This document shows, in pieces, positions 8,282 through 34,821 of a stretch of DNA of 64,000 nucleotides (position 1 is the first letter of the stretch; the number at the start of each line of letters is the position of its first letter). A program made the translations under genes and the position numbers. This stretch comes from Saccostrea cucullata (Eukaryota), in contig NW_026928692.1 in NCBI RefSeq assembly GCF_032062105.1, positions 248,001 through 312,000 on the forward strand. The letters run 5' to 3'. The notes beneath the pieces are model-generated. The model did no database searches. It was not told where the DNA came from and worked only from the letters and a program-made list of their open reading frames with translations.

Positions 8282-9451
8282 TTAAAACATCATCATTGCA
8301 AAGTAATAGACAGTTATTGAACCAAGAATGCAGAAGAAAAGAAAGAAGAGCACTTGGTCTAATATCCCCATGCTACTGGCCCACGTTCTAAACTCATTTA
8401 CATTATCTGGAGATGTCTTCCTTGTGATGTTGTTTTTGACGTCAATATCTTCACCATGCACAGTTTTTATGCGACAACATGGCAGACGTTGGTCACCGTA
8501 GTAAAAGAAGAGCCGTGTCTGCACAATTACTATCAGCACGATTATCACACCGGTGATAATCAGAATCTCTATGTACATGGTCAGATATATGTTGTCTTTA
8601 GCTGACAGAGAGGACCCCAGGGCTGAGAGGTAAATCGAGTACGCTAAGAATGTTGTTATAGCAAATGAAGTTTTCTCTCCAGACTCAACCGGAATCAAAA
8701 AGACACACAGATTTAACAGAGAGAGCAAAGATAAGGGCAACAATACCGTCAAAACCACGAAGAAAGACTTTCTCCGAAGAGTAAAGCTAACAGTCAGTCC
8801 AGTTTTTTCTCCCGAGGTTCCAAACATATTTGCGCTAACAACATCCCATTCCGTTGTCCCTTTCACTTGTTGGACATTCGGATTTACGTTGATGATGACG
8901 TCATCTGAAGAGTATCCAAGTACCACGAAAACAAAATCACACGTGTGGGTGTCGAAAGGATAATTTTCTAAGTTCAAGTCACATGCTACAGAAAAAAGAC
9001 CACCTGAAGACCACTTTATCTCTCCAGAGGATGACACATGAAAGATGCCGAAGTGATTTTGTAAGTTCTCATAATTTCCGATAGGGTTACCCAGACTTAT
9101 TGTTGGCCACCATATATCATTTGTTTTTACGACAATGTCGCTGATATTCGAGTGGTCTTCTTTATTCCAGACAAGAAATTCATCATTCCACTGAAACTGA
9201 AAGTATCCAAGCAAGGAAACCTTTTCTTCTTTTTCACTGAGATCGTGGAAGCGCTTTACAACAAAACTGGCATTAATGACGACAGTGTCAAGCTGTAGTC
9301 TGCGCGGTCGTAAGTAAGGGTCATAGTCCCGCAATAAGGTCCTTCTCAATGACGTCACTTTCTCTGCAGTAATATTATCACTCCCTAGGCATCCAGTGAT
9401 TGCCAACAAATGAATAATATTCCAAGTAAGAAGGATCTCGATGTAGATCAT
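8282..9451 (-). CDS. intronless Cys-loop ligand-gated ion channel subunit, nAChR-like, copy 1 (389 aa, most divergent)
   Basis: Signal peptide, YDPYLRP, WND..LVW, IWWP, Cys-loop CDLNLENYPFDTHTC, four TM segments, ESGEK before M2; no vicinal CC in loop C. Confidence 0.93.
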   Translation of the reverse strand: MIYIEILLTWNIIHLLAITGCLGSDNITAEKVTSLRRTLLRDYDPYLRPRRLQLDTVVINASFVVKRFHDLSEKEEKVSLLGYFQFQWNDEFLVWNKEDHSNISDIVVKTNDIWWPTISLGNPIGNYENLQNHFGIFHVSSSGEIKWSSGGLFSVACDLNLENYPFDTHTCDFVFVVLGYSSDDVIINVNPNVQQVKGTTEWDVVSANMFGTSGEKTGLTVSFTLRRKSFFVVLTVLLPLSLLSLLNLCVFLIPVESGEKTSFAITTFLAYSIYLSALGSSLSAKDNIYLTMYIEILIITGVIIVLIVIVQTRLFFYYGDQRLPCCRIKTVHGEDIDVKNNITRKTSPDNVNEFRTWASSMGILDQVLFFLFFCILGSITVYYFAMMMF

Positions 9452-9779
9452 TTTAGTATGCTGATGAATTCTGTTTCATGTATGTTATTTTTCATCAACG
9501 CGAAGAAGGCATTAAGTAATTACAAAACCTTGTTCAATCAATAACATTCATATAACATCATTCCATTCTGGGAAATAAATAAAAAGATAATGAAAAAAAT
9601 TGATTAGAAATGGTATAAACACATAATAGAGTTTGCACTCATGAGGATAAGGATGATGCTCTAACCATCAAACACACAGACCTGTATTAATTTTATGTGA
9701 TATTTGGAAACAAAAGTCGTTTCTACTAATATATATCTTTGAGACAGGTATTCTATAGATTTTTAATTTTATAGGGTGA

Positions 9780-10250
9780 AGATAATAAACAGTGTTCGAT
9801 CTAAAAAAAGAATCGGTCAAAATGCACAGAACATAGAAATTCCAGAAATGGGATTCAGGTGCCTAAGAAGAGCAAGCATTCCCTTCTGACTGGTTATACT
9901 CATTCTGAGCCTTATGTATTGATCAGACAGACGGAAAAATCCGTAATCAAGTTAAGGCCTTACAAATATTGTTTGAAATAACAGCCTACTGATACTCATA
10001 CATTGTTAATTAGGTTATTATAACGATCATAGAATTTCCGAAATGCTGGTTTTAAACGAGGCAGCTGAAATATCCCTGCATCAACCAATTATTTGTCAGT
10101 TGCCCGACTGGGTTTAAAAATAAATCGTATTCACAGCATGTCCAGAGCATCGAATAAATTGGTTACACAAACACCACAGGCATGTAATAAGGGAATACGA
10201 CTACATAAAAGTTGACACTGGAAGAACTGAAGTTCGACGTTTTGTTATAG
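9780..10250 (-). mobile_element. old Penelope-like element 3' fragment
   Basis: Reverse complement shows a degenerate RT C-terminus and the conserved 3' motif (ggcacctga..cccat) at 9846-9900. Confidence 0.6.
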
Positions 10251-10538
10251 ACTTTCTGGAAGGTGATTTTCAATAATTTAAAAAAAGTTTAATTGATTGT
10301 TTGCTATGATTGTTAGCTTTATTATAGACGTCTCTTTTAATCAACCATAATCACGCGATCCTCATTAAGTGTATATAAACCATGGTTTCTGTTATATCAT
10401 TCAGTCTGTTGGCTCGTGTGGATCTGAAAAAAAACCCATACATGTAGATGGTTGCTTTATTTAGGACTTTCTTAAAGGGGCTTAGACCAGATTGGAAGTA
10501 AACTGTTTCATAAATTTTCCGTATAATATTATGACTTA

Positions 10539-32600: not shown

Positions 32601-33147
32601 GATATCAAAAACCCTGAACTTCAATTTATAGTGGAGAATGGTTGTGTATAAAGTTTTAAAGTCGTCAAGTTTTGAAGCTGTTGATTTTTGGTAAAATCTT
32701 GTGAATTCAAATTGTCCAAAAGTTCTTTGGAATTTTTGAGTATCCACATCTGATTCACACCACTTCTTGAATATATTTTTGCACAGTACTCTTGAAGTTT
32801 TTCCTTCACTACTGTCAATATCTTATTGAGAAGTAAAGAAAGAGGTTTGGTTGAACATCTACTTGAACCCGCAATGTATCTTTGTTTGTACGGATTATTA
32901 TGAAGTATCGGAATCCAATACATATATGGTATAGTTCAAATTCCTTTTTGGTTCTTCGGGATATCAAAAATATTCAAAACTGAAATATGATTTTGAAGAA
33001 TTCCTTCCTTAGAAAAGAAACTATGAGTATAAGTTGGATTACCACGTGTAGAATTAAATCCATGTTCTTCTTAAATACAATTTATATAATGAGCCTTACA
33101 AAAGAATAAAATGTTACCTGCTTTGTCAGCAGGAACCAGTACGTACT
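29680..33147 (-). mobile_element. Penelope-like (Naiad-type) RT region followed by about three head-to-tail copies of its 3' ~1.07 kb
   Basis: YVLVPADKAGN at about 33145, YWIP..H, GIPMGTKCAP, YISQLIRYAR. ORFs 30943..31191 and 32010..32258 encode identical peptides offset by 1067 bp; the leftmost copies carry many deletions. Confidence 0.85.
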
Positions 33148-33636
33148 GAGAAGTGAGTTTTTAGAGTGCTGTTTCTGTGTACAAGGACAGATTAAACAAA
33201 CAAAAATTGGATGCCTGGATTGGTACATATTTCTGGGCTTACTTTTGTTTCAAATGATACAACTGATAAATTTCCAAAATATTATGACATTGTAAACCTT
33301 CTATGATGCTCACTATTCTACCTTTCTGCAGCCATACATAGTAATCTATACAAATATTTTTCATTTCAAATTCCACTTTTGTGTAAATTAAGTAAAGGTT
33401 TTGTATCATCTGTCCATAAATGATAAATTAGTCAATCTGTTCATTCTGATGTCTCCAAGAATGATTCAGTCCATGGGTCGAGATGAGCTGTCTATTGAAC
33501 ACTGTGTCGATGCATATTAAGTATTTTTCAGAAACTGCCAAACTTATCTTGTGTTTTTTAAATTTCAAAGAAAATGCAAATACAGAGTTTGAGCTTTCAA
33601 AGGACAAGAAGTCTTACCAAATCAGTCTATTAACTT

Positions 33637-34821
33637 TTAAGATTTGGCCATCATCAAATCAAAGTAATAGATACTGACTGATCCTAAAATACACGAAAAA
33701 AAGATAAAAAGAACCTTATCAATAATCACCATACTATTTGCCCATGTTCTTGTTTTCAATGGTTTTGAAGTTTCTACAGAGAGCGTGTTTTTAGAGTCAC
33801 CCAAATGTGATCCTTCGATATTTTTGTCAGACACTGCGTTTCCAACAAAACATGGAATTTGATGTTCGCCATAATAAAAGAAGAGTCTGGTTTGAACAAT
33901 GACTAAAACCATCATAATAACACTCAGAACCATCAGTATTTCTATGTATACCACCATGTATACATTGTCTTTGGCAGGGAGAGAGGATCCAATGGCCGAC
34001 AGATAAATCGAGTAGGCCAGAAATGTTGTGATTGCAAAAGATATTTTCTCACCAGATTCCACAGGAATGAGAAAGACAAACAAATTCATTACAGAGAGCA
34101 AACAAAGGGGCAGCAACACCGTCAGTACCACGAAATACGGTTTTCTTTGTAATGTGAAGCTAGCAGTAAGTCCAGTCTTTCCGTAAGGCATACCGTAAAC
34201 TCTGCCTGCCTCAACTTTCCACTCGGTTGTTCCCCGTACCTCCAGAACACTAGGTTCCGCATTGATTATAACATCATCGTAAGGGTATCCAAGAATAGAG
34301 AAAATAAAATCACATGTTTGTGTATCAAAAGGGTACTTCTTTAAATTCAGCTCACAGACAACTGAATATAACCCGGCAGGATACCATTCAATATCACCAG
34401 AAGATGAGACGCGAAAAATCTTGTAAGGATTCTGAAAAGTTTCAAAATCTCCAACAGGATTCCCTAAAGCAATCGTGGGCCACCATATGTCATTTGTCTT
34501 GAACTCTATGCTACTTATATTGGAATACTGTTCTTTGTTCCAGACTAGGAATTCATCATTCCAAAGAATCCTTAGGCTGCCAAGCAAGGTAACAGTTTCC
34601 TCCTTTTCATTTAGATCGTTGAAGCGATGGACGTAAAAAGAAGCTTTAATGATCACTGGGTCAGCTTGGTTTTTCCGGGGTCGGATATAAGGGTCGTAGT
34701 TCCGCAGTAAAGACTTCCTCAGTGATGTTATATTTTCTGCAGTCACGTTTTCTTTTCCCAAACATTCTTTAAGCAAGAAAGTTAAGAACGACCAAAGGAA
34801 GAGGTCTACTCGGTGTCGCAT
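33637..34821 (-). CDS. intronless nAChR-like Cys-loop channel subunit, copy 5 (394 aa from ATG 34821)
   Basis: MRHRVDLFLWSFLTFLLKECLG signal peptide aligns with the paralogue starts; the ORF-track start at 34890 is a TTG. Cys-loop and M1-M4 intact. Confidence 0.95.
   Translation of the reverse strand: MRHRVDLFLWSFLTFLLKECLGKENVTAENITSLRKSLLRNYDPYIRPRKNQADPVIIKASFYVHRFNDLNEKEETVTLLGSLRILWNDEFLVWNKEQYSNISSIEFKTNDIWWPTIALGNPVGDFETFQNPYKIFRVSSSGDIEWYPAGLYSVVCELNLKKYPFDTQTCDFIFSILGYPYDDVIINAEPSVLEVRGTTEWKVEAGRVYGMPYGKTGLTASFTLQRKPYFVVLTVLLPLCLLSVMNLFVFLIPVESGEKISFAITTFLAYSIYLSAIGSSLPAKDNVYMVVYIEILMVLSVIMMVLVIVQTRLFFYYGEHQIPCFVGNAVSDKNIEGSHLGDSKNTLSVETSKPLKTRTWANSMVIIDKVLFIFFSCILGSVSIYYFDLMMAKS

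What the first reader, a model, noticed from the sequence alone, without database searches (positions are those of the whole stretch)
8282..34821. Tandem array of intronless nAChR-derived channels with a dismantled acetylcholine site: candidate bivalve chemosensory receptor cluster
Seen: five co-oriented single-exon paralogues. Aligned by eye to alpha7 nAChR, the aromatic box is gone. Loop A Tyr is Gly (IWWPTI(S/A)LGN), loop B Trp is Leu/Ile (CDFxFxx[L/I]GY versus CKLKFGSWSY), loop C is short, lacks YxCC and differs between copies (MFGTSGEK, VYRVSNGM, IYSMAPYGK, VSSMPYGK, VYGMPYGK), and loop D Trp is Tyr or Ser. The Cys-loop, -1' Glu (ESGEK), 9' Leu and a hydrophobic 13' are retained, which points to a gated cation pore, and the M3-M4 loop is short. 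Known: bivalves have large intronless nAChR-like expansions, and cephalopod chemotactile receptors are intronless tandem nAChR derivatives that lost ACh binding and sense environmental compounds. Inference: this is an orphan non-cholinergic receptor repertoire under birth-and-death evolution, possibly environmental chemosensors assembling as mixed pentamers.
Basis: partly seen in the sequence, partly recalled or inferred. Interest (0 to 1): 0.8.

Follow-up and report, generated by a model that had tools for sequence, protein, structure and literature searches.

The report
Oyster nAChR-like orphan channel gene cluster
This is a tandem cluster of four intact genes and one broken gene for nicotinic-receptor-like ion channel subunits in an oyster; they keep a cation pore but have lost the acetylcholine-binding residues, which I found to be the rule across this genome's large and already published family of such genes, not a special feature of this cluster.

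Summary
Five co-oriented Cys-loop receptor paralogues lie on the minus strand at 8282-34821. Four are intact single-ORF genes (c1, c2, c3, c5). The fourth in order, c4, is a pseudogene with frame-breaking deletions of 43, 4 and 1 nt.

A HMMER alignment to human alpha7 confirms the substitutions: loop A Tyr to Gly, loop B Trp to Ile/Leu, loop C Cys-Cys lost, loop D Trp to Tyr/Ser. The Cys-loop, the SGEK (-1' Glu) motif, 9' Leu and 13' Ile are kept.

The genome is a Saccostrea oyster. The cluster is an oyster-family (Ostreidae) clade that RefSeq annotates as 'acetylcholine receptor subunit beta-like' in Crassostrea, Ostrea and Saccostrea. Whole-gene dN/dS is 0.1-0.3 and M2 is almost invariant, so the intact copies are functional subunits.

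The 'dismantled ACh site plus intact cation pore' is not distinctive. Among 49 other non-redundant single-ORF paralogues from the same genome:
- none has the loop C Cys pair;
- only 4 keep W55, Y93 and W149 together;
- 19 lack all three, as this cluster does.

Jiao et al. 2019 described such bivalve expansions.

The chemosensory reading has no support here. Expression could not be examined, and PDB matches show no special affinity to cephalopod chemotactile receptors. Verdict: a new member of a known kind, of modest interest.

The parts
8282..9451 (-). c1: intact single-ORF nAChR-like subunit (389 aa), the most divergent copy (about 60% identical to c3). It is the orthologue of S. echinata P0009.
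11418..12602 (-). c2: intact single-ORF nAChR-like subunit (394 aa).
14033..15217 (-). c3: intact single-ORF nAChR-like subunit (394 aa), used as the reference copy. The AF2 model has mean pLDDT 79 and shows a beta-sandwich extracellular domain plus four transmembrane helices.
21560..22693 (-). c4: pseudogene. A 43-nt deletion near 22639 separates the ancestral ATG and signal peptide from the body. A 4-nt deletion near 21706 and a 1-nt deletion near 21623 break the M3-M4 loop and M4 frame. The residual ORF 21693-22661 has no signal peptide and no M4.
33637..34821 (-). c5: intact single-ORF nAChR-like subunit (394 aa from the ATG at 34821). It is the sister of c3.
16886..18160 (-). Non-LTR reverse transcriptase ORF (RVT_1) inserted between c3 and c4. 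The other haplotype (contig C8815) has different sequence at this site.
23168..27734 (+). Ty3/gypsy-type LTR retrotransposon (protease, RT, RNase H, integrase). It is flanked by direct repeats that are 100% identical over at least 131 nt, and it lies about 475 nt upstream of the c4 ATG.

Best explanation
The cluster is an oyster-family (Ostreidae) branch of the known bivalve expansion of intronless, tandemly duplicated nAChR-like genes.

Shown:
- Four intact genes encode full pentameric-channel subunits: signal peptide, Cys-loop extracellular domain, M1-M4 and a short cytoplasmic loop.
- The cation-selectivity and gate residues are kept (-4' Glu, -1' Glu in SGEK, 9' Leu, 13' Ile), as are the coupling elements (Cys-loop YPFD, pre-M1 Arg, M1 Pro).
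- All of these are under strong purifying selection.

Inferred: the products assemble into gated cation channels whose orthosteric pocket cannot bind acetylcholine in the canonical cation-pi way. No loop B Trp, loop A Tyr, loop C Cys pair or loop D Trp remains. The pocket floor was replaced by small or aliphatic residues that are themselves conserved across oysters (Gly/Ala/Ser at Y93, Leu/Ile at W149, Tyr at W55). Loop C, the lid, varies as freely as the cytoplasmic loop. The most likely function is therefore a non-cholinergic (orphan) ligand-gated cation channel subunit with a remodelled pocket. The ligand and the tissue are unknown.

The cluster itself evolves by tandem duplication, gene conversion over the pore region, transposon insertion and pseudogenisation.
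For: Identity:
- Pfam PF02931/PF02932.
- The best PDB sequence matches are alpha7 and muscle beta nAChR.
- The AF2 model (pLDDT 79) matches nAChR chains at Foldseek E about 1e-28.

Organism and family:
- Homologues are named Saccostrea cucullata and S. echinata at 76-93% identity.
- Homologues at 51-56% identity are RefSeq 'acetylcholine receptor subunit beta-like' of Crassostrea gigas, C. angulata and Ostrea edulis.
- The 23 family rows form one clade (SH-aLRT 100, stem length 1.63) apart from 60 other paralogues of the same genome.

Functional constraint:
- NG86 dN/dS is 0.09-0.34 over the whole gene.
- M1-M3 dN is 0.01-0.02, against 0.10-0.16 in the extracellular domain.
- Family entropy is lowest in M2 (0.33 bits) and loop A (0.34), and highest in loop C (1.63), close to the M3-M4 loop (1.82).

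Site loss and pore retention.

Known kind:
- The genome has at least 105 single-frame nAChR-like hits out of 480 candidates.
- Of 49 non-redundant sampled paralogues, 0 have the loop C CC pair, 4 keep W55+Y93+W149, 19 lack all three, 49 keep the Cys-loop, 47 keep -1' Glu and 48 keep 9' Leu.
- Jiao et al. 2019 (PMC6896357) report 99-217 nAChR genes in bivalves, mostly intronless and tandem, with few keeping the ACh sites.

Cluster dynamics.
Against: - There is no expression, assembly or electrophysiology evidence for any member.
- The pocket was judged only from sequence alignment to alpha7, not from a pentamer structure.
- A subunit that contributes no binding face, like muscle beta1, would show the same pattern of conserved pore and free loop C.
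- Restriction to Ostreidae rests on a word-indexed search that can miss distant relatives.
Confidence: 0.55

Rival explanations
1. Accessory (structural) subunits. The products do not bind a ligand themselves. They co-assemble with ACh-binding alpha subunits of the oyster, as muscle beta1 or neuronal alpha5/beta3 do, and tune the conductance or trafficking of ACh-gated receptors.
For: - Muscle and Torpedo beta subunits are among the best PDB matches: 122 bits for c3, and the top hit at 107 bits for c1.
- RefSeq calls the orthologues 'subunit beta-like'.
- Pore and coupling elements are conserved, while loop C is as variable as unconstrained segments.
Against: - Complementary-face residues are also replaced (loop D Trp, loop E positions), so these subunits could not serve as a normal beta-type binding partner.
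- The replaced pocket-floor residues are conserved across oysters rather than drifting.
- Dozens of similarly stripped subfamilies exist in the genome, far more than accessory roles would seem to need.
Confidence: 0.2
2. One reading: the cluster is a bivalve counterpart of cephalopod chemotactile receptors. That is, environmental chemosensors expressed in exposed epithelia (gill, mantle edge, palps, larval foot) and forming mixed pentamers.
For: - Features shared with CRs: intronless coding sequence, tandem array, loss of ACh-binding residues, short M3-M4 loop, cation pore (CR properties from PMC11526382).
- The highest extracellular-domain divergence falls on loops F and C, where dN/dS reaches 0.8.
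- A preprint reports a 'CR-like' clade that includes bivalves (PMC13174522).
- In bivalves many nAChR-like genes are most highly expressed in gill (PMC6896357).
Against: - No expression data could be obtained.
- PDB scores to CRB1 and CRT1 (98-111 bits) are no higher than to alpha7, muscle beta or 5-HT3A.
- dN/dS stays below 1 in every window.
- All the shared features are generic to this genome's expansion, so they carry no information specific to this cluster.
- The Crassostrea orthologue's Cys-loop is absent from the C. gigas set whose expression was published.
Confidence: 0.12
3. Decaying retrocopies: the ORFs are open by chance or only recently inactivated, and make no functional protein.
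For: - c4 is already a pseudogene.
- Jiao et al. note that intron-poor nAChR genes more often have no or low expression.
Against: - Four ORFs of 389-394 codons are intact in both haplotypes.
- dN/dS is 0.09-0.34, with M2 nearly invariant at dS 0.2-0.3.
- Orthologues are conserved across three oyster genera.
Confidence: 0.05

Closest known systems
Bivalve/lophotrochozoan intronless tandem nAChR expansion (Jiao et al. 2019, BMC Genomics 20:937, PMC6896357)
   Same: - Bivalve genome with more than 100 nAChR-like genes.
- Intronless coding sequences in tandem arrays.
- Lineage-specific duplication.
- Most copies lack the alpha-type Cys pair and the principal ACh-binding residues.
- Pseudogenes are present.
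   Different: This Ostreidae clade does not appear in that paper's C. gigas Cys-loop list. It sits on a long stem (1.63 substitutions per site), and its nearest paralogue in the same genome is only about 31% identical.
Cephalopod chemotactile receptors (octopus CRT1 PDB 8EIS/9E6B, squid CRB1 PDB 8EIZ)
   Same: nAChR-derived, intronless, tandemly expanded, no canonical ACh site, short cytoplasmic loop, non-selective cation pore.
   Different: - No closer in sequence than alpha7 or muscle beta (98-111 bits against 105-132 bits).
- Sensory expression and activation by hydrophobic ligands are unknown here.
Human alpha7 nAChR (e.g. PDB 7KOO, 9VIX)
   Same: - Best overall sequence match for c3 (132 bits).
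- Same fold.
- Cys-loop, SGEK -1' Glu, 9' Leu and hydrophobic 13' are shared.
   Different: - Y93, W149, C190/C191, Y195 and W55 are all replaced.
- The loop A Asp of WxPD is Thr.
- Loop B is 3 residues shorter.
- 20' Glu is Ser.
- The M3-M4 loop is about 44 residues.
Alpo4, an orphan nAChR-like receptor of the annelid Alvinella pompejana (PDB 8BX5; eLife 2023, PMC10338036)
   Same: Lophotrochozoan nAChR-like homologue without the loop C Cys pair. It does not respond to ACh or serotonin, and no agonist was found despite screening.
   Different: Alpo4 keeps the aromatic cage (F103, W159, Y199, Y205, W65), whereas this clade has lost it. The sequence match is weaker (88-94 bits).
Vertebrate muscle nAChR beta1 subunit
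   Same: A non-alpha subunit with a conserved cation pore that takes no part in agonist binding. It is the top PDB match for c1.
   Different: Beta1 works only within a fixed heteropentamer with alpha1. No partner is known here, and the family is tandemly expanded and oyster-specific.

Membership tests
Cys-loop pentameric ligand-gated ion channel, cationic nAChR/5-HT3 branch | Neur_chan_LBD extracellular domain followed by a Neur_chan_memb transmembrane region | tested here: met
   PF02931 matches at E 1e-34 to 1e-38 in all five. PF02932 is above the cut-off in c2 and c3, just below it in c4 and c5, and not reported for c1. The AF2 model shows four transmembrane helices.
Cys-loop pentameric ligand-gated ion channel, cationic nAChR/5-HT3 branch | Cys-loop disulphide pair C-x13-C with a (F/Y)PFD core | tested here: met
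   C156 and C170 of c3 are invariant in the 24-sequence alignment A2 and in all 88 aligned sequences. The core reads YPFD.
Cys-loop pentameric ligand-gated ion channel, cationic nAChR/5-HT3 branch | Cation-type M2: -1' Glu in a GEK motif with no -2' Pro insertion, 9' Leu gate, hydrophobic 13' | tested here: met
   ESGEK, 9' L and 13' I are found in every family member. Reading these as selectivity determinants rests on established alpha7 mutagenesis knowledge, not on a test here.
Acetylcholine-gated nicotinic receptor (agonist-binding alpha-type subunit) | Vicinal Cys-Cys at the tip of loop C | tested here: not met
   C190/C191 align to M/A or a gap. No CC occurs in the loop C region of any copy.
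Acetylcholine-gated nicotinic receptor (agonist-binding alpha-type subunit) | Aromatic box: loop A Tyr93, loop B Trp149, loop C Tyr188 and Tyr195, loop D Trp55 | tested here: not met
   Y93 -> G/A/S, W149 -> I/L, Y195 -> K/M/S, W55 -> Y/S/I. Only the Y188 equivalent survives, as Y or F, in some copies.
Bivalve intronless tandem nAChR-like expansion (Jiao et al. 2019) | Uninterrupted coding sequence, tandem co-oriented array, in a bivalve genome with a massively expanded repertoire | tested here: met
   Single ORFs run from signal peptide to M4. Five co-oriented copies lie within 26.5 kb. The genome has at least 105 single-frame hits out of 480 candidates. Homologues are named Saccostrea.
Cephalopod chemotactile receptors (CRs) | Phylogenetic membership of the CR clade | tested here: inconclusive
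   Only an indirect test was possible. HMMER bits to CRB1 and CRT1 are 98-111, no higher than to alpha7 or muscle beta. No joint tree could be built, because CR sequences have no reference id here.
Cephalopod chemotactile receptors (CRs) | Expression in sensory epithelium and activation by poorly soluble environmental compounds rather than ACh | not testable with these tools

The most novel reading that the evidence does not exclude
The Ostreidae-specific clade is an independently evolved, CR-like environmental chemoreceptor family. Its conserved, de-aromatised pocket floor and hypervariable loop C lid would recognise waterborne or surface cues (for example settlement or food cues), through homo- or heteropentamers of the tandem paralogues.
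Probability: 0.1. Interest if true: 0.75.

Novelty: new member of a known kind. Interest (0 to 1): 0.3.

Why it matters
The function of the hundreds of bivalve nAChR-like genes that cannot bind acetylcholine is still unknown. This cluster is a compact, well-delimited example of them:
- four intact paralogues with nearly identical pores and divergent loop C and loop F;
- orthologues in three oyster genera.

That makes it a convenient test set for deorphanisation. It does not open the question any further than the published genome-wide surveys do. The feature that made it look special, loss of the ACh site with the pore kept, is the norm in this genome.

Tried and rejected

2. Transcript evidence from public contigs.
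   - Crassostrea contigs (L007-L017) all end in a short tandem repeat, not in poly(A), and are colinear with a genomic contig.
   - Ostrea contigs (L079-L086) are colinear with the chromosome and have recurrent ends but no poly(A) or splice junction.
   - Both sets fit genomic unitigs equally well, so I make no claim about expression.

3. Published C. gigas expression. The orthologue's Cys-loop (C-[E/D]-MKLQKFPFDTQT-C) is not in Additional file 2 of Jiao et al., so its Table S1 cannot be used.

4. Extra loci elsewhere in the genome. The hits on contigs C8815 and C9665 turned out to be haplotigs of this same locus, colinear at 88-98% nucleotide identity. The subfamily therefore has only the five window loci.

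5. Positive selection. Sliding-window NG86 gives no window with dN/dS above 1. Site models were not run, because there are too few unsaturated coding sequences.

6. Joint tree with CRs. Not done, because PDB chains are not available as protein ids and I did not type sequences.

7. The large representative-protein search. Not used, because it returns neither names nor taxa and so could not settle lineage restriction.

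
Full report
**What is in the sequence**

The window is G000:C10829:248001-312000 of a 1.17-Gb assembly. Listing ORFs and running tblastn of the copies against the window gives exactly five Cys-loop receptor loci, all on the minus strand:
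- c1 8282-9451
- c2 11418-12602
- c3 14033-15217
- c4 about 21560-22693
- c5 33637-34821

All five match Pfam Neur_chan_LBD (E 1e-34 to 1e-38). Four also match Neur_chan_memb. c1, c2, c3 and c5 are uninterrupted ORFs of 389-394 codons running from a hydrophobic signal peptide to M4.

c4 is not intact. The DNA alignment with c2, c3 and c5 and coordinate mapping show four deletions:
- a 43-nt deletion just after the signal-peptide region, so the ancestral ATG at 22693 runs into a stop after 42 codons;
- a 4-nt and a 1-nt deletion in the M3-M4 loop and M4 region;
- a 3-nt in-frame deletion.

No further copy lies elsewhere on the 339-kb contig.

**Binding-site and pore residues**

The HMMER alignment of c3 to human alpha7 chains fixes the correspondences.

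| alpha7 (mature numbering) | c3 residue |
|---|---|
| W55 (loop D) | Y82 |
| Y93 (loop A) | G120 |
| L109 / Q117 / L119 (loop E) | R137 / E145 / Y147 |
| W149 (loop B) | I177, followed by a 3-residue deletion |
| Y188 (loop C) | Y209 |
| C190 / C191 (loop C) | M211 / A212 |
| Y195 (loop C) | K216 |

Carried to the other copies:
- the loop A position is always Gly;
- loop B is Ile or Leu;
- loop D is Tyr (Ser in c5);
- the Cys pair is absent everywhere.

The pore reads PVESGEK-ISFAITTFLAYSIYLS. That gives -4' Glu, -1' Glu, 9' Leu, 13' Ile and 20' Ser. From established alpha7 mutagenesis knowledge, a GEK motif without a -2' Pro insertion and with a hydrophobic 13' indicates a cation channel.

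The Cys-loop (C-x13-C with YPFD), the pre-M1 Arg and the M1 Pro are invariant in the family alignment.

The AF2 model of c3 (mean pLDDT 79; only the M3-M4 loop is disordered) has the expected beta-sandwich plus four helices. It matches muscle and alpha7 nAChR chains at Foldseek E about 1e-28.

The one overstatement is 'loop C is short': it is only 1-4 residues shorter than in alpha7.

**Organism and family**

The word-indexed protein search returns proteins named Saccostrea cucullata (93%) and S. echinata (76%, 59%), then unnamed proteins at 51-56%, then nothing above 34%. Cluster look-up identifies the 51-56% group as RefSeq 'acetylcholine receptor subunit beta-like' of:
- Crassostrea gigas (XP_034300549.1);
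- C. angulata (XP_052675116.1);
- Ostrea edulis (XP_048777155.2, XP_056012549.1, XP_048746666.2).

Within G000, the apparent extra copies on contigs C8815 and C9665 are colinear with window 15-19986 and 33137-36685 at 88-98% nucleotide identity. They are haplotigs of the same locus. The subfamily therefore has just these five loci, each intact one with a second allele.

In a tree with 60 other single-ORF paralogues from G000 and five outgroups, the 23 family sequences form one clade (SH-aLRT 100) on a stem of 1.63 substitutions per site. Within the clade:
- c1 pairs with an S. echinata orthologue;
- c3 and c5 duplicated after the split from S. echinata;
- S. echinata, Ostrea and Crassostrea have duplicates of their own.

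**Selection**

Nei-Gojobori estimates:

| Comparison or region | Value |
|---|---|
| Whole-gene dN/dS between paralogues | 0.09-0.34 |
| Whole-gene dN/dS between alleles | 0.10-0.24 |
| M1-M3 dN | 0.01-0.02 (dS 0.17-0.28) |
| Extracellular domain dN | 0.10-0.16 |
| Residues 175-219 (loops F and C) dN | 0.25-0.40, dN/dS up to 0.8 |
| M3-M4 loop dN/dS | about 0.4-1 |

Across 16 family members:
- M2 (0.33 bits) and loop A (0.34 bits) are the most conserved segments;
- loop C (1.63 bits) is as variable as the cytoplasmic loop (1.82) and the signal peptide (1.79).

The substituted pocket-floor residues are themselves conserved: G/A/S at Y93, L/I at W149, Y at W55.

So the intact genes are functional, the pore is under the strongest constraint, and the pocket was remodelled early and then kept. 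Loop C is either unconstrained or diversifying, and nothing here separates those two.

A mosaic of shared sites and a 125-nt identical run between c2 and c5 over M1-M2 indicate gene conversion. Evolution is thus partly concerted, not pure birth-and-death.

**How unusual is the cluster?**

The genome search with c3 found at least 105 single-frame matches out of 480 candidates. I fetched 60 of them. All gave full-length single ORFs with signal peptides. After removing near-duplicates, 49 remained:

| Feature | Count out of 49 |
|---|---|
| Loop C Cys pair | 0 |
| Loop A Tyr | 4 |
| Loop D Trp | 8 |
| Loop B Trp | 28 |
| W55 + Y93 + W149 together | 4 |
| None of the three (as in this cluster) | 19 |
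| Both Cys-loop cysteines | 49 |
| -1' Glu | 47 |
| 9' Leu | 48 |

'Dismantled ACh site with an intact cation pore' is therefore the rule in this oyster's intronless repertoire. Three other first-stage notes on this genome describe the same pattern at other places.

Jiao et al. 2019 (PMC6896357) had already reported:
- 99-217 nAChR genes in bivalves, largely intronless and tandem;
- only 33 of 132 C. gigas genes of alpha type, and only 13 of those with conserved principal sites;
- a suggestion of diverse ligands.

A 2026 preprint (PMC13174522) describes molluscan clades with substituted binding residues and a 'CR-like' clade that reaches bivalves.

The Crassostrea orthologue's Cys-loop is not in Jiao et al.'s C. 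gigas list. This particular clade was therefore probably not in their set.

**The chemosensory hypothesis**

Cephalopod CRs share the intronless, tandem, ACh-blind, cation-channel design (PMC11526382). But every one of those features is generic to this genome's expansion. Sequence scores give no special affinity:

| Query | PDB matches (bits) |
|---|---|
| c3 | alpha7 132, Torpedo beta 122, 5-HT3A 112, CRB1 111, CRT1 98 |
| c1 | muscle beta 107, alpha7 105, CRB1 101, CRT1 100 |

Public contigs of the orthologues are indistinguishable from genomic DNA.

The annelid orphan Alpo4 (PMC10338036) shows that such receptors can resist deorphanisation even with a solved structure.

**Verdict**

- non-cholinergic, functional, cation-channel subunits evolving by duplication and loss: yes;
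- chemosensor: untested and not favoured by anything specific.

The best explanation is an Ostreidae-specific orphan branch of a known bivalve expansion (confidence 0.55). An accessory-subunit role is the main rival (0.2), and the CR-like chemosensor is a minority reading (about 0.1). This is a new member of a known kind, with interest 0.3.

Noticed in passing
window 23168-27734: Ty3/gypsy-type LTR retrotransposon between c4 and c5. The flanking direct repeats are 100% identical over at least 131 nt (23168-23298 and 27604-27734), which suggests a very recent insertion. The pol ORF 23314-26688 carries protease, RT, RNase H and integrase domains. A second overlapping ORF (26651-27289) suggests a frame change near the integrase C-terminus.
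   Followed up: partly
window 16886-18160 (-): Non-LTR reverse transcriptase ORF (RVT_1 plus DUF6451) between c3 and c4. The other haplotype (C8815, about 19897-21028) has different repeat-like sequence at this site, so this looks like an insertion polymorphism.
   Followed up: partly
window 29704-32612: Tandem repeat with a unit of about 1067 bp (copies 98-100% identical) in the c4-c5 spacer.
   Followed up: no
window 38001-39194 and 39561-41165 (+): Two ORFs on the same strand downstream of the cluster. The first is Cys-rich with no Pfam match. The second has a secretin-type 7TM domain (PF00002, E 9e-19). They are probably two exons of an adhesion or secretin-like GPCR gene.
   Followed up: no
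window 6533-7219 (+): A 228-aa ORF with weak HTH_32/HTH_29 matches, probably a remnant of a Tc1/mariner-type transposase.
   Followed up: no
c2 and c5, c3 residues 246-290 (M1-M2); window about 11730-11870 and 33950-34090: c2 and c5 are identical over 125 nt, although c3 is the sister of c5 overall. Shared-site patterns switch along the gene: c2=c3 in residues 51-100 and 151-175, c3=c5 in 201-250 and 326-375, c2=c5 in 251-325. This points to gene conversion among the tandem paralogues.
   Followed up: partly
c3 residue 209 and the aligned residue of c5, compared with haplotigs G000:C8815 and G000:C9665: The Tyr equivalent to alpha7 Y188 in loop C is Tyr in the window alleles of c3 and c5, but Ser in the alternative alleles (c3h, c5h) and in c4. 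This is an allelic Tyr/Ser difference at a former agonist-contact position in two paralogues, possibly spread by gene conversion.
   Followed up: no
G000:C8815 (27.8 kb) and G000:C9665 (30.2 kb): Both contigs are alternative haplotypes of the window locus (88-98% nucleotide identity; allelic dS 0.07-0.24). The 1.17-Gb assembly therefore contains uncollapsed haplotigs, which inflate paralogue counts. About 11 of the 60 sampled loci were such near-duplicates.
   Followed up: yes
window 15322-15446 and 22826-22950; about 320 nt upstream of each ATG: The duplicated unit extends about 100-320 nt upstream of the start codons. It includes a pyrimidine-rich tract ending in AG just before the ATG, which could be a splice acceptor for a 5'-UTR intron. 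This could not be tested without RNA reads.
   Followed up: no
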